IMG/VR virus record: IMGVR_UViG_3300023257_000007
Span: 284,223-348,222 of that record
Length of the DNA: 64,000 nucleotides
Strand: one strand, 5' to 3'
Under the pieces are notes generated by a model. That model was not told the DNA's origin. It worked only from the letters and a program-made list of their open reading frames with translations, and ran no database searches. Each line of letters begins with the position of its first letter. The stretch's first letter is position 1. Made by a program: the position numbers and the translations under genes. This document shows, one piece after another, positions 336 through 55,762 of the stretch.

Positions 336-716
336 ATGAAATTTTTAAAAACATATGAAACATATAAAGAACCAATTTGGATGCAAGAAATTTATAAATT
401 GCAAAAGAAATGTGATGATTATTATCATTCAAATTCAAAAGAAATAGATTTAGATCCATTTGCAACAATACCTATTAACATAGAACATAAAGGAATTAAG
501 TATAATTATTTAACAATAACAGAATTTGGTTATTATTTAACAGATGACGATAAATTTTTATCTCTTGATAATGCTAATTCTAATTGGTCAGATTTTTCTT
601 TTAAAGAACATTATGTTAGAGAAAATCCAATATTAATACAAAAATTATTTGATTTAATGAATATTGATTATAATATTATCATAGATATTGAATCTGAAAA
701 ATTAGGTGTTTTGTAA
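336..716 (+). CDS. hypothetical protein with N-terminal leader and C-terminal GL-type tail
   Basis: MKFLKTYETY... ends EKLGVL. Confidence 0.8.
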   Translation: MKFLKTYETYKEPIWMQEIYKLQKKCDDYYHSNSKEIDLDPFATIPINIEHKGIKYNYLTITEFGYYLTDDDKFLSLDNANSNWSDFSFKEHYVRENPILIQKLFDLMNIDYNIIIDIESEKLGVL

Positions 717-731
717 AATGGAGAATTATTA

Positions 732-741
732 TTAATATATA
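732..741 (+). promoter_or_regulatory. putative phage late-promoter motif TTAATATATA (representative copy)
   Basis: Exact intergenic copies oriented toward a start codon 5-44 nt downstream at 732+, 9962-, 11130-, 22216-, 27384+, 29868-, 29912+, 32856-, 33303+, 45844-, 48377+, 51421+, 58669+; analogous to T4 TATAAATA. Confidence 0.6.
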
Positions 742-766
742 TCTGTAAGAAAAATAATATCTTTTA

Positions 767-2152
767 ATGATCAAGAAATACAATGATTTTATTCAACCTA
801 TAAATGAATCAAGAGTTAAAACTTTTGGTTTTCCAAATGAAGTTAATAATGAATTAAGTAAGAATGATATTAAATCTTTGAAAGAAGTAAAATATGGTGG
901 TAAAGGTAAAAAATTATTATCTCAGAAAATTATTAATATTGTTAATAATAAAGAATCTATTGTAATTGAAAATAAAAAGAATAATGAATATCTAATTCTT
1001 ATACCTAAAAGTCAAGGGTTTACAATTTATTATTATAATGGTATTAGAATTCTACCACCACAAACATTAAAAACAAGTCCAGTAAATCAAGATATAACAT
1101 TATTATTTAGTAGAATGTATGAAAAAGAAATCGTACAAATTCCTACACATACAAGCTTTATTAATCAATTCAATCCTAAATATGATCAGTTAAATGTTTA
1201 TGCTACAAAGGATGTAAAGAACATTGAAACATTTGATTATGTTCAAGTAAAGATAGATAAAAATGTTGCAGACAAAGTTAATAGATTGACCAAGGGTATG
1301 GGTTTTGATATAAGAAGCAATCTAAGAGCAAAAATTTCATTCTTAGCTGATCCATTAAAATGGAAAAATAATCCATTAGATCCAAATACATTACTAACGG
1401 TTCAGAATAAAGTTTCATCTATAATATTATTAGATTATTTAGCTGAAATAAAAGATAATTTTGTTCCATCATCAAGTGGATTTTTATTCGAATCATTCAT
1501 AGCAGGCCTTATTGGAGGACACGTAGTTGAAGACAATACCCAAGTTGATATTTACCTACCAGGTAAAGGACCTTATAAATCTAAAAATTATCAATTAAAA
1601 TTATATGATAGGGGTTCAATGTCTAATCTCAATGTTATAAAGAATAACACTACAAGTTTACAAAAAGTAATTAATGGTATGCCTATAAGCCAACAAAATT
1701 TCATATTGATAGGGTTAAAAATAGATGAAAATATAGAAATGTATTTAGTACCTTTTAATGAAGAATTTGAACAATTAATGGAAGATGAAGGATTTTTACC
1801 AAACCAACCTAAATTAACACCTACATTTTTAAGATCATTTAAAACAAAAAAAGCTTTTTCATCAAATATAACTGACAATTTTCAAGAAAGGGGTATTGAA
1901 TATCTTGGTACTTTAAGATTTGGTAATTTTACCAATAAAATAAATAGTGTTAAAAAAGATCTTGGGGATTCTCTTAAAGATGTCTGGGAATCAGTAAAGG
2001 CACTACATGATGAAATTGACACTTTAGTAACTGGTATAAGTGCTAAGAAAAGAAAAATATCAGATAAAACAAGGGTGTTAAAACAATCAAAAAAAGTTGA
2101 TTCTAAAGTTAAAAAATTGTATAAAACAATTATTACAACAGAAGAAGAATAG
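767..2152 (+). CDS. leader-bearing protein with putative PD-(D/E)XK nuclease-like domain
   Basis: Starts MIKKYNDFIQPINE; GFLFESFIAG...VDIY...YQLKLY resembles the E-x-D-x-(Q/E)xK core. Confidence 0.5.
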   Translation: MIKKYNDFIQPINESRVKTFGFPNEVNNELSKNDIKSLKEVKYGGKGKKLLSQKIINIVNNKESIVIENKKNNEYLILIPKSQGFTIYYYNGIRILPPQTLKTSPVNQDITLLFSRMYEKEIVQIPTHTSFINQFNPKYDQLNVYATKDVKNIETFDYVQVKIDKNVADKVNRLTKGMGFDIRSNLRAKISFLADPLKWKNNPLDPNTLLTVQNKVSSIILLDYLAEIKDNFVPSSSGFLFESFIAGLIGGHVVEDNTQVDIYLPGKGPYKSKNYQLKLYDRGSMSNLNVIKNNTTSLQKVINGMPISQQNFILIGLKIDENIEMYLVPFNEEFEQLMEDEGFLPNQPKLTPTFLRSFKTKKAFSSNITDNFQERGIEYLGTLRFGNFTNKINSVKKDLGDSLKDVWESVKALHDEIDTLVTGISAKKRKISDKTRVLKQSKKVDSKVKKLYKTIITTEEE

Positions 2153-2160
2153 GTTCAATT

Positions 2161-2478
2161 TTATATAAACAACCCATAAACTTCTTCATAACATATAACA
2201 TCATACTCTTTTATATATTGTCTAGTCTTTGCAACTAAACCAATACTCTTAATTATAAAAGTGTGCACATAATAATCTAAATTATCAATCTCCTCTTTTT
2301 TAGGATCACCGCCATTATAACCAACCGCATGTTTTACTAAATCAACTAATTCCTCTTCCCACTCTTCCCATGTCAGATCATCTTCTTCATCTTTATCTAT
2401 TCCAAAATACTCAAATACATTATCAGGTACTTCATCAAGATTATTTATTCTTTTTAACTTCTTTTTAAATATATTCAT
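2161..2478 (-). CDS. hypothetical protein
   Basis: 105-aa ORF in a co-oriented run. Confidence 0.7.
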   Translation of the reverse strand: MNIFKKKLKRINNLDEVPDNVFEYFGIDKDEEDDLTWEEWEEELVDLVKHAVGYNGGDPKKEEIDNLDYYVHTFIIKSIGLVAKTRQYIKEYDVICYEEVYGLFI

Positions 2479-2490
2479 AATTTTCTTTAT

Positions 2491-5511: not shown

Positions 5512-5778
5512 TTATAATAATCCTAATTTTATTGAAGATATTTTTGAATCTAAATCTTTATCTAAAAAATAATTGAATTTTTCACTGTTATTTATACTAT
5601 CATAAACACATATCCATGCTTGTTCTTCACTTAGTCCAAACGGGACAGCAATTTCATGAAAACCTACGGTAAAAGATGACCAATCTTCATATATTGGATT
5701 AAATTCAAACCTACTTTTATTAGTATTTTTAATACAATCATACATTTGTTTTAATCTATTATAATTATTCATATTCAT
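5512..5778 (-). CDS. hypothetical protein with GL-type tail
   Basis: Ends SIKLGLL. Confidence 0.7.
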   Translation of the reverse strand: MNMNNYNRLKQMYDCIKNTNKSRFEFNPIYEDWSSFTVGFHEIAVPFGLSEEQAWICVYDSINNSEKFNYFLDKDLDSKISSIKLGLL

Positions 5779-6675: not shown

Positions 6676-6870
6676 TTAGTAAAGTCCCATTTTATTTGCA
6701 TTATAAAGGTCTGGATTTTCTTTTTTCCACCATTCCCAATAACCATCTAAATTATTATAAGGTAATTGGTTTGTATCACAATATAATGCTTTTAATCCTT
6801 TAGGCAATTCTGGCAACACATTAAATTTATTGTTAATACAATTTAAATCTCGTAAATATTCTAATATCTT
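6676..6870 (-). pseudogene. 3' remnant of an LRR gene (last repeats, cap and tail)
   Basis: Frame reads ...LPELPKGLKALYCDTNQLPYNNLDGYWEWWKKENPDLYNANKMGLY*, near-identical to the end of 47218..47877; in-frame stops upstream and no ATG start. Confidence 0.75.
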
Positions 6871-11768: not shown

Positions 11769-12092
11769 TTATAGTATATTCATTTTTAAGCTTTCTAATT
11801 TATATTCTAATTCTTTTTCTTTCAACCAATTCTTAAAATCTATACTTTTAGCCGTCATAATATTTAATCTCGTATATAACCAAAGTGCGGGACCACCATA
11901 AATAAAAATTATGGAAAGAGTAAAAGATTCAGTTTTTTTTGTTGACGATAAAAGATTCACCATATCGATATCATAACCCACCCCATAATATTCACTCAAT
12001 ATATCAAGAGCAAATATACATTCATTTGGTTTCACATTACAAAAATTCTCATATTCAAAATCTCTCATTATAGTATGTTCAAAATCTCTCAT
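11769..12092 (-). CDS. hypothetical protein
   Basis: Ends SLKMNIL (tail variant); short N-terminal duplication MRDFE x2. Confidence 0.65.
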   Translation of the reverse strand: MRDFEHTIMRDFEYENFCNVKPNECIFALDILSEYYGVGYDIDMVNLLSSTKKTESFTLSIIFIYGGPALWLYTRLNIMTAKSIDFKNWLKEKELEYKLESLKMNIL

Positions 12093-16857: not shown

Positions 16858-17190
16858 TTATATTAATCCTAATTTATAACCATCAAAGAAATATTGTAAA
16901 TCATGTTCTTCAATAAATTCATCAAACCACCTCAATATATGTCCTGGATGATTAATCCGAGTTAAATCTATAGCATTTGTTCTACCAGAAGATTCAAAAC
17001 AAGAAACTGTATGTTTTTCATCAACGAACAAAACAAGTGGAAAGTACTTTCTACTTAACAATGGTTTAACAAATAATGATCGCCACAAATGTGTATGTTC
17101 ATATTTCATATGATCAAACCATTTAAGAATATTTAAAAGTTCTTCATTATTTTCAATGACTACATTTAATATATGTCTTGATTCTTTCAT
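16858..17190 (-). CDS. hypothetical protein with GL-type tail
   Basis: Ends DGYKLGLI. Confidence 0.7.
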   Translation of the reverse strand: MKESRHILNVVIENNEELLNILKWFDHMKYEHTHLWRSLFVKPLLSRKYFPLVLFVDEKHTVSCFESSGRTNAIDLTRINHPGHILRWFDEFIEEHDLQYFFDGYKLGLI

Positions 17191-17599: not shown

Positions 17600-17952
17600 T
17601 TATAATACTCCTAATTTAATCGAATCAATTATTTCTCTTATTAATTTACATGCTTCAATAAGACCTGCCTCTAGTGCTTCTTCGTAGGTTTTATATTCAC
17701 CTACTACATCTGTTGGATAACTAGAACCATTATCACTTTGTTCACCTATTTTATAACCATATTTAGTACAATTAAATTGAGCATTAACATCTAATTTGTA
17801 TTTTTTTCTTTAAATATATGATATTTTTCCATGATTCTTTCAACAATTAATTCTCTTAACTCATAATAACTAATTTGTAATTTTTTGTCTTCAATTGTGA
17901 GTAAATCTTCCCATGTTGTTGCTTCTCTTAAGGCTTTTTTCATATTTTCCAT
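17600..17952 (-). pseudogene. frameshifted or fused gene
   Basis: 5' frame stops near 17791; a startless second frame (17809-17600) reads RKKYKLDV...YKTYEEALEAGLIEACKLI...SIKLGVL*; the switch is at an A7 run. Confidence 0.55.
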
Positions 17953-26641: not shown

Positions 26642-27145
26642 TTATTCATATTCTTCTATTGCCTCCTCAACTGTTCTTACATCAAAATATTTATTTAGGA
26701 AATCAACGAATTTCTTTCTATCATCTTCATTTCCAAACCAACAATCATGACATTCTTTTTCATAATCATAGAGTTCAATACAAAATGGCCCACTACCATA
26801 TTTTTTAAAGTATCTAATATTCTTTAAATTTATAGTATGCCCATTTTCCCCCTTCTCATTTAATTTAATCCAATAATCTTGTTCATTTAACGACATATCT
26901 TACATTTTAGGGTAAATAAATTCTTTTCTAACTTTAGTCTCTATAGTTACATAATTATCAGACAATTCAACAATTCTACCATCCATTCCATCTGAAAGTT
27001 GATTAAATTTAACATCATCACCTTTTCTCATACATTTTCTATATTTTCGAGCAATTCTCTCTTTTTTAACTGATTTTATAATTCTATAAAATATATAACC
27101 TATAATACAAATTATACCTATTGCAAATAATATTTTTATTGTCAT
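26642..27145 (-). other. two small hypothetical genes (26642-26896; 26900-27145, single-TM, YajC-like layout)
   Basis: ORF track; the second has a TM helix followed by KGDDV...GRIVEL..VTIE. Confidence 0.6.
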
Positions 27146-27300
27146 AATAATCCTAAATCTTTTCCATTAAGATAATCAGCTAATCTTTCTTTTAATATAT
27201 CGGCCAATTCATCTTCTGTTAATATTTCTCTTAATTTACTCATGATAATATCGTAATTTAATGGTTCATCAATACTACAAAAATCTTCATCATTACTCAT
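27142..27300 (-). CDS. 52-aa protein with GL-type tail (not in ORF track)
   Basis: MSNDEDF...YLNGKDLGLL*. Confidence 0.65.
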   Translation of the reverse strand: MSNDEDFCSIDEPLNYDIIMSKLREILTEDELADILKERLADYLNGKDLGLL

Positions 27301-27456: not shown

Positions 27457-27858
27457 ATGAAACATTTAAAAACATATGAAAATATAAAAGATTTTGACAA
27501 AAATAAAGAAGATCTAATAAAAATGACAGTTAAATATCGAAATGAAATTGCTGATAAAATTTATAGTCTTGAAAAATATACCAAATCTAGAATAATAGAA
27601 ATACCATTTAATTCTCATCCTAAATATGATTTAATAAGAATTGAATGGTGTGATGTTGAAAAGATGACAAGTTTTGATATTGATATTGATATTTGTGCTG
27701 TTGGTGAAGGTTTAAACCACCTTGTTTTTTGGTTAAACCAAGGAAAAATTACTAAATCTCGTAATTTTAATAAGAAAGTTTACGATGAAATTATAAAAAC
27801 TATAATGGACGATAATTTAGAACAATATTTAATATCAAATAGAATGGGATTATTATGA
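27457..27858 (+). CDS. hypothetical protein with leader and tail
   Basis: MKHLKTYEN... ends SNRMGLL. Confidence 0.8.
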   Translation: MKHLKTYENIKDFDKNKEDLIKMTVKYRNEIADKIYSLEKYTKSRIIEIPFNSHPKYDLIRIEWCDVEKMTSFDIDIDICAVGEGLNHLVFWLNQGKITKSRNFNKKVYDEIIKTIMDDNLEQYLISNRMGLL

Positions 27859-33317: not shown

Positions 33318-34587
33318 GTGAAATATCTAAAAAAATATGAACTACTCTCTAAAGATGAAAAAATCAAAGAGTGGGAAAAAATGCAGAATAATGTAGATTT
33401 AGTAAAAAAATTATTAAATCATGAAAAATTTCATTATCACATAAAAGATTTAATATTAAAAGATTTAAATACACAAATAAAAGACAGATTAGTTATAGTT
33501 GTGGCTGGTATATCACCAGGTATAGATGGTTGTGATATTCAAGTATCATTCCAGACAAATCCTTCAATAGGCGCATTTTATGGTAGACCTATTAACATGA
33601 ATGATGTTAAAAGTATATTAAAAAATATTGATAATGTTTCAGATGATGTGTTTCATTCACAACCATCATTTTTTATGAGTGAAGAAGATCTTATTTTTGT
33701 ATATAAATTTAGATTTGATGAATTTATTAAAAATAATAAGTGGATAACAGAAGGAGAGAATCTAGGATTAATGTAATGAAATATCTAAAGAAATATGAAT
33801 CATGGTATGATGAAAAACCTATACCAGAAATATACGACAAATGTATGTTACTTAAAAAATATGCAAAAGTTGACCACGAAGGTTTACATATTATAAAAAT
33901 ACCAATACCTATTCATATAGAAGATCAATCTTTTAATAATGTTTATTTAATTTATGATAATAGAAAAATTCATATATTTGCATCAGATGATTGGTGGAGA
34001 GATAAAGATAGTAAAGAATTAATCTGCTTAGGTTTAACTGTTGATGATAAATATCAAAAACCAAGAATACACCATTGGTCAACAATAGATTTGAAAAAAG
34101 TATTACCAGCCTTAGAAGAATATATGAAAAATAATGATATAATAAAATATGCAGAAGCAAACAATTTAGGACTATTATGAAAAATTACATAACATTTTTA
34201 AATGAGGGTTATTCTAATATTGAACAGAAAGTTTTAAATATATTGCAAAAATTAGAAAAGTATGCAATAGTTTTAAGCGAAGAAAAATATGAATTATCAG
34301 AAATATTAATAAAAAAACCATATACAGTAGATAATAGTAAACAACATGAATTTAAATATTTATCAATACAATATAAATACAATAAATTTAATGGTACAAA
34401 TTATATAATTGTATATGGTATACAAAAATGTGATGTTAATGATATAATATTAGCATTTAAATTGGGTACTCATGATATTAGAACAGAAGTTTTAGAACAA
34501 GAAAAAGAATTATACCCTTTATACGATTACCTTTCATCAGACGATATTGTTCCACTAATACAATCAAGTAGACTTGGATTAATGTAA
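33318..34587 (+). other. operon of three leader- and tail-bearing genes (33318-33776, 33776-34180, 34177-34587)
   Basis: Starts MKYLKKYE/MKYLKKYE/MKNYITFLNE; ends GENLGLM/ANNLGLL/SSRLGLM; overlapping stop-start junctions. Confidence 0.8.
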
Positions 34588-42380: not shown

Positions 42381-42410
42381 AAAAAATCCCACCTAAAAGA
42401 TGGGATTTTT
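42381..42410. terminator. intrinsic terminator hairpin
   Basis: aaaaatccca...tgggattttt. Confidence 0.65.
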
Positions 42411-45989: not shown

Positions 45990-46790
45990 ATGAATAATAC
46001 ACCGGAATACTTCGGCATAAAAGATTACAAAACTAACAGTGATGGAAGTATAAATGTTTACCAAAATGTTGATATGTCATGTATGGATTTAGTAGAAATT
46101 CCTATTAAATTCAACATAGTAGAAGGCTCATTTAATATCAGACAAAATCACTTAAATTCTCTTAAAAACTCACCAAAAGAAGTATTTGGGGATTTTGATT
46201 GCTCTCATAATATAATAAAATCTTTAAAGGATGGTCCAATTTATGTATTAGACTCATATCGAGCACATAATAATTCATTAACTGAAATAAACAGCAAATT
46301 TGAATGTGGATTTAATTTAATGTTAGATTTTAATAGATTAGAAAAATTAGATTCAATACAAGAATATATTGAGGGTAGTTTAAGTTTATCACACAATAAA
46401 TTAAAAACATTAAAAGGAAGTCCAAAAGAAATTGAAACAAGTTTTTATGTAAGTAAAAACAACTTATATAGTTTACAAGGTTGTCCACAAACAATAGGTT
46501 GTAATTTTGAATTTTCACATAATAAAGTAATAGACCTATATCATTTTCCAGAAAAAATTGGTGGTTCAATTAATATGGATTATAACGATTTATATGAATT
46601 ACCATCAGGCTATTCAATCTTAAATATGAGTTGGAAATATAATAATATAACAGAAGAAATATTAGATCCATTATATGAAATAGAATTAAAAAAAGACCCT
46701 TATTTATTAAAATCAATAAAAGATAAAGTTTCTGAAAAACTTGTTGAAAAATATAAATGGGTTATTGATGCAAATAAACTTGGTTTATAA
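45990..46790 (+). CDS. LRR protein (LxSLxGxP type) with GL-type tail
   Basis: Repeats G.F..S.N.L.SL.G.P; ends ANKLGL. Confidence 0.8.
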   Translation: MNNTPEYFGIKDYKTNSDGSINVYQNVDMSCMDLVEIPIKFNIVEGSFNIRQNHLNSLKNSPKEVFGDFDCSHNIIKSLKDGPIYVLDSYRAHNNSLTEINSKFECGFNLMLDFNRLEKLDSIQEYIEGSLSLSHNKLKTLKGSPKEIETSFYVSKNNLYSLQGCPQTIGCNFEFSHNKVIDLYHFPEKIGGSINMDYNDLYELPSGYSILNMSWKYNNITEEILDPLYEIELKKDPYLLKSIKDKVSEKLVEKYKWVIDANKLGL

Positions 46791-46794: not shown

Positions 46795-47218
46795 TTACAA
46801 GAGTCCCATTTTATCGCCTTATGTGTCTATATTCTTTTAAGATATCTTCATTAATAAAATCAATATTTTTTTTATATATATTTATTAAATCTTTTATATA
46901 TCCTCGTTCTACATAATTTTTTTGAAATTTATAAGATTTTAAACTATTTACAATATTATTATAAACTTCGTCACTTATTTTCATATAATTTTCATAATCA
47001 GTTTCAAAATTGGTTACTCTAATTGTATTTGAAGCGATTATTATAGAATTATCGTCATTTTTTAATGTTATTAAACGGTCAATATTTAAGTGGTTTATAT
47101 TAACATCTAATTCTGAAATTTTGATATAATTATTAAGTATATCATTGATTTGTTGTTTAATTTTCTTTTTAAAAAAATTATCAATAATCAAATTTTCATA
47201 TGTTTTTAAATACTTCAT
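46795..47218 (-). CDS. leader-bearing protein; GDKMGLL tail present but out of frame
   Basis: ORF 46811-47218 ends HIRR*; ggc gat aaa atg gga ctc ttg taa at 46818-46795 lies in another frame. Confidence 0.65.
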
Positions 47219-47877
47219 TACATCAATCCCATTTTATTTGCATTATAAAGGTCAGGATTTTCTTTCCAAAACCATTCCCAATAACCATCTAAATTATAAT
47301 AAGGTAATTGGTTATCATGACAATATAATTCTCTTAATCCTTTAGGTATTTCAGGTAATTTAGTTAATTGGTTATTATCACAATATAATTCTTTTAATTC
47401 TTCAGGCAATTCAGGTAATTCAGTTAATTGGTTATCACCGCAATATAATTGTATTAATTCTTTAGGTAATTCAGGTAATTCAGTTAGTTGGTTATTAGAA
47501 CAATATAATGTTTTTAATTCTTTAGATAATTCAGGTAATTCAGTTAATTGGTTATTAGCACAATATAGTCCTTTTAATCCTTTAGGTAATTCAGGTAATT
47601 CTGTTAATTTGTTATTAGCACAATCAAATTCTTCTAATTCTTTAGGTAATTCGGTTAATTCAGTTAGTTGGTTATAATGACAATATAATATTTTTAATCC
47701 TTTAGGTAATTCAGGTAATTTAGTTAATTTGTTATCATCACAATATAAATAAATTAACCCTTTTGGCAATTCAGGTAATTTAGTTAAACCTAAACCATTT
47801 AAATTTAATGTTTTACCATCAACACTTAAATGGTCTTTAATTAATTTATTTTCTGAATATGTTTTCAAATACTTCAT
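47218..47877 (-). CDS. LRR protein (about eight 20-aa LPELP repeats) with leader and tail
   Basis: 60-nt tandem units; starts MKYLKTYSE; ends ANKMGLM. Confidence 0.9.
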   Translation of the reverse strand: MKYLKTYSENKLIKDHLSVDGKTLNLNGLGLTKLPELPKGLIYLYCDDNKLTKLPELPKGLKILYCHYNQLTELTELPKELEEFDCANNKLTELPELPKGLKGLYCANNQLTELPELSKELKTLYCSNNQLTELPELPKELIQLYCGDNQLTELPELPEELKELYCDNNQLTKLPEIPKGLRELYCHDNQLPYYNLDGYWEWFWKENPDLYNANKMGLM

Positions 47878-48359: not shown

Positions 48360-48391
48360 GAATTTATATATTTATTTTAATATATACATTT

Positions 48392-49111
48392 GTGGAAAGG
48401 TTAAAATCATATAAATTATTTACTGAATCAACAACTGTAATTGGAAATTATATAAGACCAGATAAATTATCAGAAGAAGGTGAAAAATTAAATCACTATT
48501 TGCAAAATAAAGTTAAAGAAATTAAGGGCATATATCCTATTAAAAACTTTAGAGAAACTTGGTCAAATGGAGTTATAGACAAGTATATTTTCACAATACA
48601 TACATTTGACAAATTTAAAATCAAAGATATTACTGATAAATTCAAATATCTTAATATTGAACCAGAAATAGACCAAAATACTTATGATAAGTATGTAACA
48701 TACACTTTTAATAAAGGTGAATTGGATTGGATTTTTGATGCTAATAAAATGGGATTACTTGAAAATAATAGTGAAAATAATAGTGAAAATATTGAAGATA
48801 TATTAGAAAATTGGTTATTAAGTATGTTTCCATTTATGGATGAACGTGATGTTTACATAAATGAATTATATTATGGTGGATATTCAGTAGAAATATGGAT
48901 GGCAGGTTTTGATCCTGATGAAGATATCAAATTGTTAGAAGATTGGTTTGAAGAAACATTAGACGAATTAGAAAAATTAAAAATTGGTGATAGTTTGCGA
49001 TCTGTTATTGATATTGAAGATGGTCAATTTACAATCAATTTTGAATTTGATGAAGATAACAAAGATATATGGAATTGGGCCGTTGAAGGCGATAAAATGA
49101 ATTTATTTTAA
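48392..49111 (+). CDS. two-module fusion protein with internal and terminal tails
   Basis: Internal DANKMGLL then ENNSENNSEN; ends GDKMNLF. Confidence 0.75.
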   Translation: MERLKSYKLFTESTTVIGNYIRPDKLSEEGEKLNHYLQNKVKEIKGIYPIKNFRETWSNGVIDKYIFTIHTFDKFKIKDITDKFKYLNIEPEIDQNTYDKYVTYTFNKGELDWIFDANKMGLLENNSENNSENIEDILENWLLSMFPFMDERDVYINELYYGGYSVEIWMAGFDPDEDIKLLEDWFEETLDELEKLKIGDSLRSVIDIEDGQFTINFEFDEDNKDIWNWAVEGDKMNLF

Positions 49112-49903
49112 ATGAAACATTTAAGAAGAATAAACGAAAGTAAATATAGTATAACAAATAAAGGTGTGACTGAAATACTTAATAGAGCATCTTATGAATT
49201 TGGTAAAAACGAATTTGATGAAGAATATTATACATCATTATTAAAATCAATCATCAACAATGCAGACCAATCTCAATTAGATTTTATAATAGAAGAAATT
49301 TTAAAAAATGAAGATTTAGTTATTGCATATATTTACAATCTAATTGATATATTTATTAAAGATAAATCAGAAAAATCATTTAAAAAATTAACAGAGACAT
49401 TAAAATCTACACCTAAAAAAGAATGGCAACATATTGTTGATTATCTTATTAATATTGATTTTAATAACGAAGTTAAAAAAATATGTGAATTTTTATTTAA
49501 CAATGGTTTTGATATTAATACCCCTTATATGACAAATGGTCAAAACCTTATATTTTGTGCTTTTTACATGCCAAAAGAAACATTAGAATATTTAATTAGT
49601 AAAGGTTTAAACATTCACCATACTGATAATAAAGGTGATAATGTTTTATGTTATCAAGAATTAGATCACCACACATTAGATTTATTAATTAACAATGGAA
49701 TTAAAATACCAGACAAATTTTTAGATAATAGTTTTTATGTAGTTGCTGATGATAAAGGAACTAAATTATGGGCTAGTACTATATTATTAATGTTGAAAAA
49801 AAATCCAGAAATCTATATTAAGATTAAAGACAAATTAAAAGATTCAATACTTAAAAAAATACCTAACTATATTAAAAATGCATCAAATTTAGGAATTTTA
49901 TAA
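49112..49903 (+). CDS. ankyrin-like repeat protein with leader and tail
   Basis: G.DIN....GQ.L, GLNIHHTDNKGDNVL; ends ASNLGIL. Confidence 0.65.
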   Translation: MKHLRRINESKYSITNKGVTEILNRASYEFGKNEFDEEYYTSLLKSIINNADQSQLDFIIEEILKNEDLVIAYIYNLIDIFIKDKSEKSFKKLTETLKSTPKKEWQHIVDYLINIDFNNEVKKICEFLFNNGFDINTPYMTNGQNLIFCAFYMPKETLEYLISKGLNIHHTDNKGDNVLCYQELDHHTLDLLINNGIKIPDKFLDNSFYVVADDKGTKLWASTILLMLKKNPEIYIKIKDKLKDSILKKIPNYIKNASNLGIL

Positions 49904-49933
49904 TCCTTATTTTTTATTTTTCATATAATCTTT

Positions 49934-50832
49934 ATGAAAATATTACAACGTAAATTTGTAACGAGATTAATAGGAGTTCCTAATTGGAAATATTATGGTT
50001 ATGAATATTGGGATGTTGTTCCTGATATTCATAAACAAACTTTAGAAATTGAACATAATACAAGAAGTGGTAAATTCAGAATTTATATTGACAGAGATGA
50101 AATTGAAGTAATAAAATACGAAGAAGAATTAGAAGCTATCATAAAAGCTTATAGAAAATATTTAAATGATGATAAAATTAGATAAAGATTATGTGATAAT
50201 TTGGGGTGCAAGAACTCATAATGGTTATGTGTATCGTAAAGAAGAATTTCCAGTTGATATTGAGAAAGAATTTTATGTCATGTCTGAATATTCTAATGAT
50301 TTTAAATTAAAAAATATATGTGCAATGACAAATGTATGTATTGATAATATTGGTTTTTATGTAGAAAATTTCAGATTTATAGATACACAAATAGGCAAAA
50401 TATGTAAAAAACTTGGTGGTTTAGGTATAAAACAATATATTCATACACAATCTATGGGTTCACATTATAGTGATACAACAACGGTTCACAAATTAATTGG
50501 TTTTTATATATCACCGGTTTCAATGTATGATAATTTACCAGCTAAAATAATAAAGAAACAAAGAAAATTAAAATTAAATAGAATTAAAAATGCATAAAAT
50601 TGGAAATTTTTTTAGAATTATATTAAATATTAAAGTAGAATATCACTTTGAGTTTTTTATTTATTTAGATGAACAAACAGGAGAAATCGTAGAAGATGAA
50701 ATAACTGGACATATTAAATGGATGGATAAATTCTCAATAAGATCAACTACTAGAAACAAAGCTCAAAAATTAGCTTGGTGTAAAGTAAATGCAAAGTTTC
50801 CTGATTTAGTAAATAAATTGTGGATGTTTTAA
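49934..50832 (+). other. three hypothetical genes (49934-50185, 50166-50597 with RK tail, 50590-50832)
   Basis: Overlapping ORFs; 50166 ends KKQRKLKLNRIKNA. Confidence 0.7.
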
Positions 50833-51388
50833 ATCAATCCCATGTTACTTCCTTGAAAAAACCAATGTGGATCTGACATTATTTTATCTAAATCTAATTG
50901 TATCATATAATGATGCAAATCTTCTTCTTCATATAATTTAATACAAGTAAATTCATCAAGAATTTCTAATAGTTTATTAAGATCAACATCACAATCTACA
51001 CGTACTATACCACTTACAGTAGAATATATATTGGGTATTTCATCTTTATCATATATTTCAACACCAATTTTTGTAAATTCTTGTCTTAGATATAAGACAA
51101 ATTGAGATATTCTTTCAACATATTCTTCGTTTCCTGTATCATTTGCTACAGCAGTCCATTTTTGTAGATTTTCATATATTTTCAAATATTTCATTTTGAA
51201 CCTTCTAATTCTTTAAGACTTATTAAAAAAATATCATCTTTTAATAAATAATCAATATCTTCTACACTATAATATTCATCTTCAATATAAATAGTCATCC
51301 CCTGAGCAGGTACAAAATTTAAACTTACAGATATATCATTTATATCATCATCTATATAAGTTTTTAAATCAAAAATAATTGCAAACAT
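50829..51388 (-). other. two hypothetical genes (50829-51194 with leader and tail; 51191-51388)
   Basis: MKYLKIYEN...GSNMGLI. Confidence 0.7.
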
Positions 51389-51444
51389 AATTTTAAGTTT
51401 ATTTATATTATATATTTATTTTAATATATAGCTTTATAATATAT

Positions 51445-53317
51445 TTGAAATCATATAAAACCTTTGAATGGAGAGAATCTGAAGTGGTTTGTTTACCAAT
51501 TGAAGTATTTAGTGAATATTCAAATTCTATGGGCCAATCACAAAAAATAAATATTGATGTTCAAGAATATTTAAAATCAAAAGGATTAAAAACACTTTCA
51601 GGTAATGACATGGTAGTCAGTTCTTTTACAAATTTTATTGTTATTATATTTGAATCTAAAAGAACATATTATACTTTTTATGATACTATTGAAGGTATTA
51701 AAGGAGTTTACAACAATCCAGAAATATTAGATACAGTAACATCTAATGAATTATTAAATGGCGATTTAGATTATATGTTTGATGCAAATAAATTAGGATT
51801 ATTATGAAATATTTAAAAACATATGAAAATCTTATAGAACCAGATTATGATAATATTGATTTTATAAAAGTAATGGACCAAAATAATAATCAAATTAATG
51901 GTTTAACATATAAATTTAAAGCTACACGTTCACGTTTAAAAAAAATATCCAGCTTTTACGACCATGATGAATCACTAAAATTAAAAATATTACTAAAAGA
52001 AATGAAAATGAAAATACATAAATTATTTTTAACTAACATAAAACTAAAAGAAGAATATTATAAAAGAAACCCAGATATTAAAGCTGGTGAAGATTTAGGA
52101 TTATTATGAAACATTTAAAAACATATGAAGGGTTTAGTAAACCTAAAATGGTAGAAAAACCAGAACAAATTTATTTCACAAACATCAAAGCCAATGATAT
52201 TTTTGAAGCATGGAAAATTCTTGAAAAACATTTCAATATACCAAAAGTTGATAGTTCTCTTAATATTGATTCAAATCTTTTTCTAAAATCAATTAAAAAT
52301 AAACAATATAAAGAAATGTATATTCGACACATGGAAGAACATGGTAAACATTTTACAACTAAAGCTATTGTATATGATAAACATAACAATACACCCTTTA
52401 CAGTTGTTAATATAAATGACGTTAATTTTGGATATGAAAATTTTAATTTTTATGATTGGGCTGAAGAGAACGGTTATAGTTATATTCTTCAAGGAAATGA
52501 TCTAGGATTATTATGAAAAACAATTCAATATGAAATACTTAAAAACAAAAAAAATATTCGAAAACCAATCCAAAGAAATATCTGCACTTTTAAATGATAT
52601 CAATGTTAATAATATTAAAGGTATTCAAGAATATATTGATAAAGGTTATGATTTAGATTATAAAGATGAAGATGGTGATTTTGCTTTAATATATGCTACT
52701 TTAAATTATATAATAAATATTAGTGATGGTCCAAATAATTCTAAAGGTGAATTTTCAACAATAGAATTTTTAATTGACGCTGGTGCTAATTGGAATATTA
52801 AAGATAACGATAATAAAACATTTTGTGATTATTTAGAAGATAAAGATAAAGAAAAACTAAAAGATAAATATCCTGATAAATATGGACAATATATATCAAG
52901 TAAATTAGGACTATTATAATGATATATTTAAAAACATATAAAGAATCCAAAGAGGATTTTGATACTTTTAAACGAATTGAAGTTTGGAGTAAACTTAGAC
53001 CTTATTACAATAAATATGGTTCATTTGAATTAAATGTTAATATTACATTTAAGTTTGGTTTTGAAGAAGATGAAGTAAAAGATTACATATTTACTAGAAA
53101 CATAAAGAAAATAAAATATACATCACTAGATTATATTGAATTACATTCAACATTGACAGTTATAGATAAAGATGGTGGTACAAGAAGTGAAGAACAAGTA
53201 AGAAATTTTAGAAGTTGTGATAATAAATCTTTAAACGAAGTATTTAAATATATTAAAAATATATCAAATGAAGACATCATTTCATATATAGAATCAAATA
53301 GAATGGGCTTATTATAA
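51445..53317 (+). other. array of five leader- and tail-bearing genes (51445, 51804, 52106, 52530, 52919)
   Basis: All end [K/D/R][L/M]GLL; junctions of the form ggattattatgaaa.atttaaaaacatatgaa. Confidence 0.85.
52530..52919 (+). CDS. ankyrin repeat protein with leader and tail
   Basis: G.DLDYKDEDGDFALIYA...FLIDAGANWNIKDND. Confidence 0.75.
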   Translation: MKYLKTKKIFENQSKEISALLNDINVNNIKGIQEYIDKGYDLDYKDEDGDFALIYATLNYIINISDGPNNSKGEFSTIEFLIDAGANWNIKDNDNKTFCDYLEDKDKEKLKDKYPDKYGQYISSKLGLL

Positions 53318-53320
53318 ATA

Positions 53321-53348
53321 AAAAAGCCACTTTTTGAGTGGCTTTTTT
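53321..53348. terminator. bidirectional terminator
   Basis: aaaaagccact-tttt-gagtggcttttt between convergent genes. Confidence 0.75.
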
Positions 53349-53368
53349 AATATCTTTACAGTTAAAGA

Positions 53369-53647
53369 TTACACATTAACTGCTTCAGCTAGCCCTTTAC
53401 CAGCTTTAAATCTAACGACATTCTTTGCAGGAATATCAATTGATTCGCCAGTTCTCGGGTTTCTACCTTTACGTGCTTTTCGAGCAACTACTTTAAAGGA
53501 ACCAAAGTTCACAAGTTTCACATCTTCGCCTTTTGCAAGGGATTCTTTAATCACTTCCATGATTACGTTAATTACTTCTTTGCTAGCTTTTTTTGTATTG
53601 CCTGTAGCTTCGGCAACTGCATTTGTTAGGTCTTTTTTATTCGCCAT
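53369..53647 (-). CDS. hup: HU family DNA-binding protein
   Basis: NKKDL...FGSF...RKARKGRNPRTGE.I.IPA..V.RFKAGK; TATCTTTG (-7-like) at 53693-53700. Confidence 0.95.
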   Translation of the reverse strand: MANKKDLTNAVAEATGNTKKASKEVINVIMEVIKESLAKGEDVKLVNFGSFKVVARKARKGRNPRTGESIDIPAKNVVRFKAGKGLAEAVNV

Positions 53648-53861
53648 AATTCAAATTTTAAGGGTTAAACATTAATTTATAATTTCTTACTTCAAAGATA
53701 AGGAACTTTCTACCTGAAAAAAAATATTTCGTAAATTATTTTCACATTTTATTTTCACATTCATCTCGTAAGTATAAAAATAATATCAAGAAAATCCGAA
53801 TTTGTTTAATAAAAATTCAATAAAAATCAAAGAAATTTTAAATTGTTTATTGGAGATACTT

Positions 53862-54765
53862 TTATATGAGACCTAGTTTGTTTCCTTCTAAATAATATTT
53901 TATTTCTTCAACATTATCAAATTCCATACAATTTCTTTGACTACCATCTTCATTTTTTTTATTAACGCGAAAAAAAAATACTTTTTCTCATTGTTTCAAA
54001 ATATAATACAGCATATAAAGTTGAATGTATATTATAACCTTCATAAGAAGGTATATTATGAACCCAATTAAATCCTAATTTATTAAGTTTCTTATATAAA
54101 TCAATACCTTCATCAACAGTATCATAATTAAACTTAAAAGCAATGGAATTAGAAATATTAGATTCATTTAAAACTGGTTCTATTTCTTCTATTATATCTT
54201 GTATAAAATGTTGAGCTTCAAATACAGTTAAATCACCCATATCATTGCCTTTAGGAACGGTAAAAGCATAATCACCATATTTAATAAGCTTTTTTCCACC
54301 TGGATCATTATCTAACTTATCATTATCATATATAACCACCTTAATCTGTGGCAAAATATCAAACCATTGTTTTAAGTTTGAAGGATCATTACAAAAAACA
54401 GCAATAGCAGGATAACCAGATTGATGTATTCTAGCAGCATCAAAAATACCTTCAACTATAAACAAATATTTATCACCAGGTTTTATTGATTCTATACCCC
54501 ACGCACCAATTTTCTTACCTTTATATTCTTCACCAAAGTAAGTATAATACTTAGTATCAGGTTTATTCATTCCTTGTGATATATTCTTAGGGAAATTTGG
54601 ATTGTATTTTTGATAACCAACCATTTGACCAGACATATTATAAATATTAAAATATACATCACCTTTATCATTAATGAAAACATCATTGTGTTCAGGATCT
54701 ATACCTCTTTCTCTTAAATGAGATTTAGTATCAACTAATTCATTATATGTCTTTAAATATTTCAT
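53862..54765 (-). CDS. Toprim/primase-like protein with leader; tail reached only by a frameshift in a T9 run
   Basis: FIVEGIFDA...YDND...DMGD; ORF stops at 53962, but with T8 it continues to EGNKLGLI*. Confidence 0.7.
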
Positions 54766-55762
54766 TATAATAAATCCATCTTTTTACTTTCAATCCATTG
54801 TTTCATTTCTTTACTGAAAAAATATTTATATAAAGGAATCAATTGTTTCGTTCTTTTTAATTTATCTAAATTTTCTTTTTTTAAAATATTATCTCTTTCA
54901 AATATACCAGACTTTCTTACAGTAAAAATATTGTCATTATTATTATACATTGATACCTCACAAATATGTATCCAAGGCCAATTATTTACAATCTGAACTT
55001 GACGAATACCATCACCCCAATCTACATATTGATCAAATATAATATTACTACCAATATATTTTCTCATAGAAATAATTAATTCAGACATTTCATCAAACAT
55101 CTTTTGTTCAATATCATCTAATTTCTCTTTTTGTTTAATATAATCTTCGTAAGTTTTCATTAAATCAATCCCATTTTATTACCATCAAATATATAAGAAT
55201 ATTTCTTTTTTATATCAGATCGAACTTTCAATTCTCTAAATCTTTCAGGATTTTTTATAAGAAATTCATCTTGAAATAAATAAGTGTTAATGATGTGTCT
55301 ATATATATTATCATTTGAAAAATCTATATCATCAATATTTTTATTAAAATATAAAAACAATTTAATATAAAGATTAGCATATACTCTAGACGTATAAGCA
55401 ATAGATAATATTTCTTGTAAAATATTAGTTTTGCTAAAATCAAAACCTAATTCAATTAAATATTCAAACATATCAATAAAACCTTTTTGATCTTTTATGA
55501 TGTCATCATTTGTTCTGTATATTGTATGTTTTATTATTGGTAATTTGTCAATTTGTGCATCTTTTCCAAACTCATCATATATTCTCTTAGCTAATTTTTT
55601 AGATTCTTCCCAGTTTTCATTTTTATATTCACCTTTATTAGTATAATTATAATATCTAGGATTTAATAAACTTGAGAATTTTCCTTTCAAAAATTGAGGA
55701 TGGTCTTCATATTCTGAAAGTTTAGTAAATTCTAATTCTTCATATGTTTTTAGGTATTTCAT
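54765..55762 (-). other. two leader- and tail-bearing genes (54765-55160, 55160-55762)
   Basis: MKTYEDYI...SKKMDLL; MKYLKTYEE...GNKMGLI. Confidence 0.8.

What the first reader, a model, noticed from the sequence alone, without database searches (positions are those of the whole stretch)
336..55762. About 25 unrelated proteins share a C-terminal xx[K/D/N/R][L/M]GL[L/I/M]-stop tail: candidate undescribed sorting, docking or degron signal
Seen: the tail ends ORFs at 336, 5512, 6676, 16858, 17600, 27142, 27457, 27860, 33318, 33776, 34177, 45990, 46795, 47218, 49112, 50829, 51445, 51804, 52106, 52530, 52919, 53862 and 55160, with variants at 11769, 48392 and 54765. The bodies are unrelated (two LRR classes, ankyrin, Toprim, orphans). 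Codons vary synonymously, which points to protein-level selection. The tail is predictive: it exposes otherwise hidden frameshifts at 46811 and 53962. It occurs both with and without the N-terminal leader. Inference: a phage-wide addressing code read by one receptor, such as a capsid or ejection channel, an AAA+ chaperone (possibly the MoxR/VWA pair here) or a protease. I know of no described function.
Basis: partly seen in the sequence, partly recalled or inferred. Interest (0 to 1): 0.82.

Follow-up and report, generated by a model that had tools for sequence, protein, structure and literature searches.

The report
Shared C-terminal tag on megaphage proteins
About a quarter of the genes in this stretch of a giant T4-related phage end in the same short tail (…K-L/M-G-L-L-stop) on otherwise unrelated proteins; it is a real, protein-level, portable tag that related phages carry in other "dialects", and it most likely addresses a large set of effector-like proteins to the assembling phage head.

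Summary
In all six frames, 22 of 24 matches to [KDNR][LM]G[LVI][LIM] lie directly before a stop; shuffles give 0.3. The motif is about 14 residues: an amphipathic helix, a G (rarely N or D) cap, then two hydrophobic residues. Codon usage shows selection on the protein, with two small dual-coding effects. With the termini trimmed, 84 tail-bearing ORFs from this phage and the related 166-kb contig fall into 72 BLAST clusters, including LRR, ankyrin and orphan bodies.

The tail is not private to this phage. Related AT-rich T4-superfamily phages use parallel dialects, K-[YF]-N-[IL]-stop and DS[DE]E[LI]GL[LI]-stop. These are usually paired with an N-terminal leader, MK[YH]LKT[YF]E or MKTFEQY, that resembles the T4 capsid-targeting sequence.

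T4-family prohead core protein gp68 ends in a conserved K-x-[LM]-G-L. In the K-Y-N-L lineage the gp21-like protease-scaffold ends K-L-N-S, and tagged genes sit inside head modules. AlphaFold2 models give a disordered leader and a confident terminal helix on two unrelated folds.

Best reading (about 0.4): a C-terminal prohead-targeting tag for packaged, probably co-injected, proteins. No receptor was identified, and I could not retrieve this phage's own head genes. No Pfam, PHROG or literature description was found.

The parts
336..716 (+). Tagged ORF, 126 aa. Leader MKFLKTYE, tail ...ESEKLGVL.
   Evidence: no Pfam or PHROG hit
5512..5778 (-). Tagged ORF, 88 aa. No leader, tail ...SSIKLGLL.
6676..6870 (-). 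LRR fragment without a start codon. Tail variant ...NANKMGLY. 81% DNA copy of the 3' end of 47218-47877.
   Evidence: repeat D5
11769..12092 (-). Variant-tail ORF, 107 aa, ...ESLKMNIL. N takes the G slot.
16858..17190 (-). Tagged ORF, 110 aa, ...DGYKLGLI.
17600..17809 (-). Tagged short ORF, ...DSIKLGVL. Start codon unclear.
27142..27300 (-). Tagged ORF, 52 aa, ...NGKDLGLL.
27457..27858 (+). Tagged ORF, 133 aa. Leader MKHLKTYE, tail ...ISNRMGLL. Converges on the next entry.
27860..28225 (-). Tagged ORF, ...EARKMGLL. Its tail codons and those of 27457-27858 form an inverted repeat.
33318..33776 (+). Tagged ORF, 152 aa. GTG start, leader-like VKYLKKYE, tail ...EGENLGLM.
33776..34180 (+). Tagged ORF, 134 aa. 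Leader MKYLKKYE, tail ...EANNLGLL.
34177..34587 (+). Tagged ORF, 136 aa, ...QSSRLGLM. Followed by a hairpin and no downstream gene.
45990..46790 (+). LRR-like ORF, 266 aa. Tail one residue short: ...DANKLGL.
46795..47218 (-). Leader-bearing ORF 46811-47218 that stops early. Its tail GDKMGLL-stop survives in the +1 frame at 46795-46812.
47218..47877 (-). LRR protein, 219 aa. Leader MKYLKTYS, tail ...NANKMGLM. AlphaFold2 model made. At least 9 paralogues in this phage and its close relative.
48392..49111 (+). Two tagged modules fused. Internal ...DANKMGLL at 48746-48760 is followed by GAA; terminal variant ...EGDKMNLF.
49112..49903 (+). Ankyrin-repeat protein, 263 aa, tail ...NASNLGIL.
50829..51194 (-). 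Tagged ORF, 121 aa. Leader MKYLKIYE, tail ...QGSNMGLI.
51445..53317 (+). Tandem array of five tagged ORFs: 51445-51807, 51804-52109, 52106-52516, 52530-52919 (ankyrin-like) and 52919-53317. Three of the four junctions have overlapping stop and start codons (ATGA or TAATG); 52106-52516 and 52530-52919 are separated by a 13-nt gap. A terminator hairpin follows the last ORF.
   Evidence: (D8, D9, D14)
53862..54765 (-). Leader-bearing ORF 53962-54765 that continues, after a T9 tract, in another frame to the tail ...EGNKLGLI (53862-53987).
54765..55160 (-). Variant-tail ORF, 131 aa. N-terminus MKTYEDY, tail ...ESKKMDLL.
55160..55762 (-). Tagged ORF, 200 aa. Leader MKYLKTYE, tail ...DGNKMGLI. No relative among 5.8 billion proteins.

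Best explanation
The tail is the C-terminal half of a two-part protein addressing code used by a clade of AT-rich, T4-superfamily phages.

Anatomy (shown). It is a portable module of about 14 residues: an amphipathic helix ([DE]-hydrophobic-x-x-hydrophobic-hydrophobic-E-[AGS]-x-K), a hydrophobic residue, a G or N helix cap, then one or two hydrophobic residues at the free carboxyl end. It is attached to bodies with no detectable similarity to each other (LRR, ankyrin and orphans here; ankyrin, methyltransferase, LPD29 and SH3-like barrels in relatives). It is often paired with a disordered N-terminal leader that resembles the T4 capsid-targeting sequence.

Function (inferred). The tail docks these proteins into the prohead, on the scaffolding core or the inner capsid surface. 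The docking site would be the one used by the phage's own core proteins: the gp68-type C-terminus, and the C-terminus of the protease-scaffold. A large and diverse set of small effector-like proteins would then be packaged and probably delivered with the DNA, like T4 internal proteins.

Lineage dialects (KLGLL, KYNL, ELGLL) would reflect co-evolution with a phage-encoded receptor.
For: Protein-level, terminus-specific and non-random:
- 22 of 24 six-frame matches precede a stop; shuffles give 0.3.
- K and L codons in the tail match body usage. L (TTA, CTA, CTT) alternates with M (ATG) at position -4.
- In the sister dialect, K, Y and N codons also match body usage.

Portable:
- 84 tagged ORFs (this phage plus the related 166-kb contig) fall into 72 BLAST clusters once the termini are trimmed.
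- Bodies include LRR and ankyrin. In relatives they include ankyrin, Methyltransf_24 and LPD29, a domain of injected polyvalent proteins (PMC7824862).

Dialects in relatives:
- 143 of 1278 ORFs in other AT-rich phage loci end K[YF][NG][ILV], and KYNI, KFNL, KFNI and KYNL are the four commonest endings.
- One contig has about 24 such genes in a 28-gene leader-bearing array.
- L219 has 10 ORFs ending DS[DE]E[LI]GL[LI].
- The logos align with a one-residue shift, with G and N in the same slot. hhalign chooses that register, P = 0.008.

T4 kinship:
- TerL is gp17-type.
- gp32, gp44, gp46, gp47, Portal_T4, Gp23 and a gp21-type protease occur in the related loci.

Leader resembles the T4 capsid-targeting sequence:
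- T4 IPII and IPIII start MKTYQEFIAE and IPI starts MKTFKEF. Here the leaders are MKYLKTYE, MKTYEDY and, in L219, MKTFEQY.
- Leader and tail co-occur: odds ratio 3.6, p = 0.001. In the KYNL lineages they are almost always together.

Tail resembles head-core C-termini:
- gp68 ends K-x-[LM]-G-L, plus 0 to 1 residues, in 6 of 7 diverse T4-like phages; the seventh (Acinetobacter AbTZA1) ends KSMYGLKP.
- In the N-dialect lineage the gp21-like protease-scaffold ends K-L-N-S. 45 of 120 homologues match K-hydrophobic-N-x at the C-terminus. Among large ORFs in the other two clades the pattern occurs in 0 of 37 and 1 of 132.
- The post-portal protein ends [FY]-I-N-x-I or KRNNL.

Tagged genes lie inside head modules in L319, L325 and L333.

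AlphaFold2: the leader has pLDDT below 50 in both models. The terminal helix has pLDDT about 90, and the last four residues are non-helical with pLDDT 63-78. This holds on an SH3-like barrel and on an LRR solenoid.

The T4 literature says that how core proteins other than IPII and IPIII are localised 'remains mysterious' (PMC9958956).
Against: - No direct evidence of packaging: no proteomics and no interaction model.
- I could not retrieve the head module of the window's own phage. The key covariation test, whether its gp68-like protein or protease-scaffold ends in [LM]-G-L, was therefore not done.
- The gp68 motif sits after a basic stretch, not an acidic amphipathic helix, and has one extra residue between K and [LM].
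- The resemblance between the protease-scaffold ending K-L-N-S and the cargo ending K-Y-N-L covers only 3 of 4 positions, and it was noticed post hoc.
- Packaging what could be 100 or more different proteins would be unprecedented.
- About three quarters of tagged ORFs in this phage lack the leader, whereas T4 needs only the N-terminal signal.
- Two 50-kb samples of the nearest published huge phages showed no repeated termini.
- The T4 late-promoter motif TATAAATA is not enriched in the window.
Confidence: 0.4

Rival explanations
1. Structural cap only. The tail is a self-sufficient C-terminal capping helix (a Schellman-type G/N cap with a hydrophobic staple) that stabilises small, fast-evolving proteins. 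It spreads by duplication and by recombination at gene junctions. Nothing reads it.
For: - AlphaFold2 gives the helix high confidence on two folds.
- G and N interchange at one slot, as expected for a left-handed cap position.
- Junction DNA is repeated at 72-97% identity and confuses assemblies, so recombination is plausible.
- The genes occur in long tandem arrays.
Against: - A purely structural cap would not need K at a fixed position (100% in the N dialect).
- It would not need a fixed distance to the carboxyl end, nor a uniform dialect within each phage across LRR, ankyrin and barrel folds.
- LRR and ankyrin domains have their own caps.
- The last 2-4 residues are the most conserved but the least confidently modelled.
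Confidence: 0.18
2. Degron or AAA+/protease docking tag. The hydrophobic C-terminus marks early proteins for timed removal or handling by a host or phage protease or unfoldase. The logic would be that of ssrA or non-polar C-terminal degrons, or of [LIV]-G-[FL] ClpP-docking loops.
For: - Four of the last five residues are non-polar and the end is free.
- [LM]-G-L resembles the [LIV]-G-[FL] docking tripeptide (from memory).
- Many carriers are small accessory-type proteins in arrays.
- A MoxR-like AAA+ gene lies next to one cluster.
Against: - The N dialect (K-Y-N-L) does not fit either known pattern.
- Dialects differ between closely related phages, which points to a phage-encoded reader rather than a conserved host protease.
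- The MoxR/VWA pair belongs to phage families that are widespread without any such tails.
- Tagged genes occur inside late head modules.
- This reading offers no explanation for pairing with a capsid-targeting-like leader.
Confidence: 0.15
3. Hub-binding motif of the replication or late-transcription machinery, in the manner of sliding-clamp-binding tails.
For: - T4 gp43 ends SLDFLFG and gp55 ends SLDFLYEAND. These are hydrophobic-[D/G/N]-hydrophobic-hydrophobic patterns near the C-terminus, like L-G-L-L.
- Bacterial clamp motifs such as QLGLF and QLVLGL look similar (from memory).
Against: - The motif differs in detail: no S-L-D-F-L and no Q.
- The carriers are LRR, ankyrin and orphan proteins, not DNA enzymes.
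- Their number, roughly one gene in four to five, is implausible for a clamp.
- No polymerase or sigma factor of these phages could be checked.
Confidence: 0.07
4. A nucleic-acid element. The conserved gene ends would be translation-coupling, promoter or recombination signals, and the peptide would be incidental.
For: - The tail Gly codon is GGA in 69% of cases. This compares with 29% in gene bodies and 42% before Leu.
- GGA reaches 83% when a start codon follows within -4 to +15 nt and 53% otherwise (p = 0.006).
- In the N dialect the last codon is A-ending because of ATGA overlaps.
- Junction repeats are present.
Against: - All other tail codons follow ordinary usage. Amino-acid classes are kept across non-synonymous codon families: TTA/CTN versus ATG, TAT versus TTT.
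- 34 of 75 tails have no downstream start. Some are followed by terminators or by convergent genes.
- The upstream helix is conserved only at the amino-acid level.
Confidence: 0.03

Closest known systems
T4 capsid-targeting sequence (CTS) of internal proteins IPI, IPII and IPIII
   Same: A short terminal peptide shared by otherwise highly diverse small proteins of T4-type phages. It suffices to load them into the prohead core for injection (PMC3012670, PMC9026906). The leader that accompanies the tail here resembles it: MKTYQEFIAE and MKTFKEF in T4 against MKYLKTYE, MKTYEDY and MKTFEQY here.
   Different: The CTS is N-terminal and is cleaved off. The feature under study is C-terminal, has a different sequence, is found on far more genes, and has not been shown to target anything.
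Conserved C-terminus of T4-family prohead core protein gp68
   Same: K-x-[LM]-G-L at or one residue from the carboxyl end in 6 of 7 diverse T4-like phages; the seventh ends KSMYGLKP. The tail here is K-[LM]-G-L-[LIM]. gp68 is a scaffolding-core component present at about 240 copies (PMC9958956).
   Different: In gp68 the motif follows a strongly basic stretch, not an acidic amphipathic helix. The spacing to K differs by one residue. The function of the gp68 end is itself unknown. No body homology to gp68 was detected.
C-terminal capsid-interior docking peptides of the HK97-fold lineage: scaffolding proteins, the HK97 protease tail, encapsulin cargo-loading peptides (recalled from memory, not tested)
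   Same: A short C-terminal peptide, portable between cargo proteins, that binds the inside of an HK97-fold shell. The gp21-like protease-scaffold of the sister lineage ends K-L-N-S, close to the cargo ending K-Y-N-L.
   Different: The sequences differ: encapsulin peptides are extended, G/S-rich L-x-I-G-S-L types. No binding or structure is available here. The number of putative cargo types is far larger.
Sliding-clamp-binding C-terminal motifs (T4 gp43 and gp55; bacterial QL[SD]LF)
   Same: A hydrophobic, turn, hydrophobic, hydrophobic pattern at the C-terminus, shared by several proteins that dock on one hub.
   Different: Different residues, different carrier types and far more carriers.

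Membership tests
T4 capsid-targeting sequence (CTS) | Located at the N-terminus, about 10 residues, MKT[YF]x[E]F-like | tested here: not met
   The tail is C-terminal. Only the separate leader on the same proteins resembles the CTS.
T4 capsid-targeting sequence (CTS) | Sufficient to load a foreign protein into proheads, and removed by the prohead protease at (L/I)-x-E | not testable with these tools
   Needs experiments. E at -8 followed by A, G or S occurs in 50% of tails, but the sister dialect has D or N there.
gp68-type prohead-core C-terminus | [LM]-G-L within the last 3-4 residues, preceded by K | tested here: met
   Tail logo K67%-[LM]99%-G89%-L85%-[LIM]96%, against six of seven gp68 ends; the seventh, AbTZA1, ends KSMYGLKP.
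gp68-type prohead-core C-terminus | Body homologous to gp68, with the gene between portal and protease | tested here: not met
   Bodies are unrelated to each other and have no PHROG or Pfam hit. In a relative, a tagged 97-aa gene does sit between portal and protease. This phage's own head module was not retrieved.
Encapsulin-type cargo-loading peptide | C-terminal, portable between unrelated cargo proteins | tested here: met
Encapsulin-type cargo-loading peptide | Binds a pocket on the interior of an HK97-fold shell protein | not testable with these tools
   No multimer prediction was available, and the capsid protein of this phage was not retrieved.
Clamp-binding motif (T4 SLDFL[FY]; bacterial QL[SD]LF) | Consensus residues present, and carried by replication or late-transcription proteins | tested here: not met
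   No Q and no S-L-D-F-L. The carriers are LRR, ankyrin and orphan proteins. Polymerase homologues were not found in the fetched loci.
T9SS C-terminal sorting domain | A beta-sandwich domain of about 75 residues (Por_Secre_tail) | tested here: not met
   The tail is about 14 residues and helical. A true Por_Secre_tail is present only on the 1611-aa protein at 36188-41023.
ssrA-like or non-polar C-degron | Non-polar last residues recognised by ClpXP, ClpAP, FtsH or Tsp, causing rapid turnover | not testable with these tools
   The hydrophobic end is present. The N dialect fits poorly. Turnover cannot be assessed.

The most novel reading that the evidence does not exclude
A clade of uncultured T4-related phages, including this genome of at least about 430 kb, uses a C-terminal cargo-loading peptide together with a T4-like N-terminal capsid-targeting leader. 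With these it packs dozens to more than a hundred different effector-like proteins (LRR, ankyrin, methyltransferase, polyvalent-protein domains and orphans) into the head and injects them with the DNA. This would be an 'injectable proteome' whose address label co-evolves with a head protein and differs between lineages.
Probability: 0.35. Interest if true: 0.88.

Novelty: new variant of a known kind. Interest (0 to 1): 0.72.

Why it matters
- It would give a sequence rule, readable from a genome alone, for which proteins a large group of environmental phages carry in their capsids. That would turn hundreds of orphan genes into candidate injected anti-defence or host-takeover effectors.
- It bears on an open question in T4 biology, namely how core proteins other than IPII and IPIII are localised. 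It points to the conserved gp68 C-terminus as a testable docking motif.
- A short portable C-terminal tag could be used to load foreign proteins into phage heads.
- Even if the receptor proves to be something else, such as a protease, a chaperone or a hub, a lineage-specific terminal code on about a quarter of a phage's genes is an unusual way to organise a proteome.

Tried and rejected
- Megablast of 20 kb against INPHARED phages: no match.
- tblastn of a K-Y-N-I family member against INPHARED: no match.
- Homologue search with the 200-aa tagged ORF: it found only itself.
- Pfam and PHROGs on tagged ORFs and on 28 K-Y-N-I proteins: only LRR and ankyrin hits.
- ESM Atlas searches: only unnamed viral clusters. 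There was one weak structural resemblance to a TriTu immunity protein, which I did not pursue.
- Foldseek against PDB: only weak SH3-like, chromo-barrel and CAP-Gly matches.
- T4 late-promoter motif TATAAATA: not enriched in the window.
- Two 50-kb samples of the nearest published huge phages, LR756501 and LR745206: no repeated termini.
- Isopeptide (Lys-Asn) stapling of the termini: rejected, because G replaces N in this phage and the leader is modelled as disordered.
- A -10 box (TATAAT) hidden in the K-Y-N codons: rejected, because F (TTT or TTC) is as common as Y and C-ending codons are not depleted.
- A Shine-Dalgarno-like GGA as the cause of the tail: demoted to a secondary effect.
- Retrieving this phage's portal, protease and capsid genes failed by three routes: a portal-profile scan, a degenerate portal-motif scan, and walking past the contig end. 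All assemblies break just after the TerL N-terminal ORF, next to a TnpB remnant.
- Cross-tabulating the protease-scaffold ending against cargo dialect per locus was uninformative, because head-module loci contain too few cargo genes.
- Literature searches for the leader strings and for conserved termini in jumbo phages found nothing.

Full report
WHAT THE WINDOW IS

The window has 25.8% G+C. It is the last 64 kb of the 348,222-bp viral contig IMGVR_UViG_3300023257_000007. Near-identical contigs of 344,634 and 88,478 bp come from a second sample. Shared loci place the 344-kb contig about 84 kb upstream of the 348-kb one, so the genome is probably at least about 430 kb. This is an inference from the coordinates.

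The large terminase is of the T4 gp17 type. Its best matches among deposited phages are uncultured 460-735 kb genomes at 34-39% identity, followed by classical T4-like phages. A 1611-aa protein carries a T9SS sorting domain, which points to a Bacteroidota host. The same sequence is present in several salt-lake metagenomes and one marine metagenome.

CHECKING THE OBSERVATION

Across all six frames the pattern [KDNR][LM]G[LVI][LIM] occurs 24 times, and 22 of these are followed directly by a stop. Shuffled sequence gives 0.3 on average and never more than 2. In ORFs of at least 50 aa there are 19 terminal occurrences and one internal. The internal one, at 48746-48760, is followed by GAA where a stop would be expected, and the ORF then runs on to a second, variant tail. 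This looks like two tagged genes fused.

The two 'hidden frameshifts' are visible in the sequence. GDKMGLL-stop lies one frame away from the end of ORF 46811-47218. After a T9 tract, ORF 53962-54765 continues in another frame to NKLGLI-stop. For the second of these, which lay inside the laid stretch (48200-54100), contigs of two runs (X1, X4) match the window with no differences across the site.

I could not confirm a 'Toprim' body.

ANATOMY OF THE TAIL

The conserved part is longer than five residues. I collected 84 distinct tagged ORFs from the window, from other loci of this phage and from the related 166-kb contig. The logo, counting back from the carboxyl end, is as follows:
- -14: D or E
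- -13: hydrophobic
- -10 and -9: hydrophobic
- -8: E (50%)
- -7: A, S or G (90%)
- -5: K (67%; otherwise N, R, Q or D)
- -4: L or M (99%)
- -3: G (89%; N 9%)
- -2: L (85%)
- -1: L, I or M (96%)

This is the pattern of an amphipathic helix ended by a Gly cap, followed by two hydrophobic residues.

PROTEIN OR NUCLEIC ACID?

Codons for K and L in the tail follow the usage of the gene bodies. L (TTA, CTA, CTT, TTG) alternates with M (ATG) at -4.

The one deviation is the Gly codon. GGA accounts for 69% of tail Gly codons, against 29% in gene bodies and 42% when a body Gly precedes Leu. The excess is concentrated in tails followed within -4 to +15 nt by the next start codon: 83% against 53%, Fisher p = 0.006. 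I read this as a secondary, Shine-Dalgarno-like or inherited dual-coding effect, not as the cause of the tail.

Thirty-four of 75 tails have no downstream start. Some are followed by hairpin terminators (after 34587 and 53317) or by a convergent gene (27858/27860).

ARE THE BODIES UNRELATED?

With 9-10 residues trimmed from the N-terminus and 9-16 from the C-terminus, the window's tagged proteins match each other only within the LRR group. The 84 tagged proteins fall into 72 BLAST clusters.

Pfam finds LRR (47218-47877), ankyrin (49112-49903 and, weakly, 52530-52919) and nothing else. PHROGs finds nothing. A search of 5.8 billion proteins with one 200-aa member found only itself.

The tag occurs with the leader on 17 ORFs and without it on 52. 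Leader and tail are nevertheless associated: odds ratio 3.6, p = 0.001.

BEYOND THE WINDOW

Scanning IMG/VR for one common DNA spelling of the tail recovered further regions of this phage, each with 8-15 tagged ORFs per roughly 10 kb. It also recovered a second contig of 166 kb with the same dialect.

Scanning for the leader gave at least 120 hits in many AT-rich viral contigs. In those with 22-26% G+C, leader-bearing small proteins end in a parallel tail, [SAT]-x-K-[YF]-N-[IL]-stop:
- 143 of 1278 ORFs carry it, and KYNI, KFNL, KFNI and KYNL are the four commonest endings.
- One NCBI metagenome-assembled contig has 28 leader-bearing small ORFs, 24 of which carry the K-Y-N-L-type tail, most in one run on the same strand.

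Lineages with 27-30% G+C have the leader (MKYLKTYK[IL]FES) but no common tail. A metagenome scan found a third dialect, DS[DE]E[LI]GL[LI]-stop, on 10 ORFs of one 14.6-kb contig. There the leader is MKTFEQYNKK.

The two main logos line up with a one-residue shift, with G and N occupying the same slot. A profile-profile alignment picks that register, but with weak statistics, P = 0.008.

In the K-Y-N-L lineages, codon usage again shows protein-level selection. The only exception is the last codon's third base, which is forced to A by ATGA stop/start overlaps.

Bodies carrying leader plus tail in these relatives include three ankyrin proteins, a Methyltransf_24 enzyme and an LPD29 domain. LPD29 belongs to the 'polyvalent proteins' that are thought to be injected with phage DNA (PMC7824862). 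They also include a large family of SH3-like barrels, with 86 homologues that are all unnamed.

LINK TO T4 HEAD ASSEMBLY

The related loci carry gp32, gp44, gp46, gp47, Portal_T4, Gp23 and a gp21-type protease.

T4 internal proteins are a diverse set that share only an N-terminal capsid-targeting sequence (PMC3012670, PMC9026906). From the T4 record, IPII and IPIII start MKTYQEFIAE and IPI starts MKTFKEF. The leaders here, MKYLKTYE, MKTYEDY and MKTFEQY, are close to these.

For the tail I found two resemblances among head proteins.

First, gp68, a T4 prohead core protein present at about 240 copies, ends in K-x-[LM]-G-L plus 0 to 1 residues in six of the seven diverse T4-like phages I fetched. 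The seven were T4, RB69, RB43, and Acinetobacter, Aeromonas, Vibrio and Shewanella phages; the Acinetobacter phage ends KSMYGLKP.

Second, I examined the head module of a K-Y-N-L-lineage phage (L311). Its gene order is:
- portal
- a 97-aa leader-plus-tail gene
- a 'post-portal' protein ending KRNNL; its relatives end [FY]-I-N-x-I
- a 794-aa gp21-like protease fused to a repetitive scaffold, ending VFDKLNS
- the Gp23 capsid protein

Of 120 protease-scaffold homologues, 45 end K-hydrophobic-N-x. Among large ORFs of the other two clades this ending occurs in 0 of 37 and 1 of 132. Tagged genes are embedded in the head module in three of thirteen loci examined.

A recent T4 review states that the mechanisms that localise core proteins other than IPII and IPIII 'remain mysterious' (PMC9958956).

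STRUCTURE PREDICTIONS

An SH3-like K-Y-N-I protein was modelled with a 73-sequence alignment (mean pLDDT 82). The window's LRR protein was modelled with nine paralogues (mean pLDDT 93). Both show the same picture:
- The leader is disordered (pLDDT about 50 or lower).
- The C-terminal helix is confident (about 90).
- The last four residues are non-helical, with pLDDT 63-78.

The same helix-plus-end module therefore sits on two unrelated folds. That fits a portable module presented at a free terminus. It does not, however, distinguish a module that docks to a partner from one that packs back on its own body.

INTERPRETATION

Shown:
- A terminus-specific, protein-level, portable module of about 14 residues sits on roughly a quarter of the genes in this region.
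- It has lineage-specific dialects in related T4-superfamily phages.
- It is statistically coupled to a leader that resembles the T4 capsid-targeting sequence.

Inferred, with confidence about 0.4:
- The tail is a prohead-targeting signal that uses the docking site of the phage's own core proteins.
- The tagged proteins are packaged and probably injected.

The main weakness is that I could not fetch this phage's own head genes to test whether their C-termini speak the same dialect. In addition, both head-protein resemblances are short and were noticed post hoc.

Rivals:
- A receptor-independent structural cap spread by duplication and junction recombination (0.18).
- A degron or AAA+/protease docking tag (0.15).
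- A clamp-like hub motif (0.07). T4 gp43 and gp55 end SLDFLFG and SLDFLYEAND.
- A nucleic-acid element as the primary cause (0.03).

About 0.17 is left for something not considered.

NOVELTY

No Pfam, PHROG or literature description was found for the tail or for the leader-plus-tail architecture. The concept it most resembles, short terminal capsid-targeting peptides, is known. I therefore rate it a new variant of a known kind. The scale, the C-terminal position and the dialects are the new elements.

Noticed in passing
window, N-termini of ORFs at 336, 27457, 33776, 47877(-), 51194(-), 51804, 52106, 52530, 52919, 55160(-), 55762(-); also L219: An N-terminal leader, MK[YH]LKTYE (MKTYEDY at 54765-55160; MKTFEQY in L219). 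It resembles the T4 capsid-targeting sequence, is modelled as disordered, and is widespread in AT-rich viral contigs (at least 120 hits). Lineages with 27-30% G+C have MKYLKTYK[IL]FE-S, which fits the T4 protease (L/I)-x-E rule.
   Followed up: partly
window 61752-62926 and 20990-22186: Only the N-terminal ATPase part of TerL (299 aa) is present as an ORF. A TnpB zinc-ribbon remnant (Cas12f1-like_TNB) follows on the other strand, and a full IS605-type TnpB lies at 20990-22186. Every public assembly breaks within about 2 kb after this point, so the terminase gene is probably interrupted by a repeated mobile element.
   Followed up: partly
window 36188-41023 (-): A 1611-aa phage protein with MAM, GEVED and a T9SS C-terminal sorting domain (Por_Secre_tail), plus a weak Hoc-like Ig match. 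It is a phage-encoded protein apparently addressed to the host's type IX secretion system.
   Followed up: no
window 57834-60028 (+): The dUTPase appears split. A dUTPase ORF (57834-58376) is followed by an HNH/zinc-ribbon endonuclease ORF (58702-59748) and a 99-aa ORF with weak intein-splicing and dUTPase hits (59729-60028). This suggests an intein or homing-endonuclease insertion.
   Followed up: no
window 27841-27877: The tail codons of two convergent tagged genes are reverse complements of each other (ATGGGATTATTAT / ATAATAAACCCAT). They form a hairpin that could act as a bidirectional terminator.
   Followed up: no
tail Gly codons, window and other loci of the phage: GGA is strongly preferred at the tail glycine when the next gene starts within a few bases (83% against 53%). 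This hints at a Shine-Dalgarno-like signal, which is unexpected for a phage of Bacteroidota.
   Followed up: yes
window 9046-9193: Two identical tandem copies of a 74-nt T-rich unit in an intergenic region, with degenerate copies at 10140 and 36018.
   Followed up: no
window 41293-42369 (-), 58702-59748 (+); L074 1788-3440; L311 12615-15877: Many DUF723/HNH-type homing endonuclease genes, with internal 190-nt repeats at 41647-42390. Two are inserted inside the head module of a relative.
   Followed up: no
contigs IMGVR_UViG_3300023257_000007 and 3300022868_000009 (L005/L023, L048/L036): Shared loci place the 344-kb contig about 84 kb upstream of the 348-kb one. The genome is therefore probably at least about 430 kb, larger than either contig.
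   Followed up: partly
L182 18000-20372 (NCBI GCA_043658615.1, JBIGLD010001262.1): The contig with the array of about 35 tagged genes ends in a G+C-rich stretch with unrelated ORFs. It may be a chimeric assembly or a junction with host DNA.
   Followed up: no
window 53369-53647 (-): An HU-type DNA-binding protein gene (Bac_DNA_binding) sits between tagged-gene clusters. A repeat at about 53394-53518 attracts contigs from elsewhere in the metagenomes.
   Followed up: no
L310 / T4 ipI (L186 18592-18879): T4 IPI ends ...IIAKNLL, which is loosely reminiscent of the K-hydrophobic-N-hydrophobic dialect. This is a single case and may be chance.
   Followed up: no
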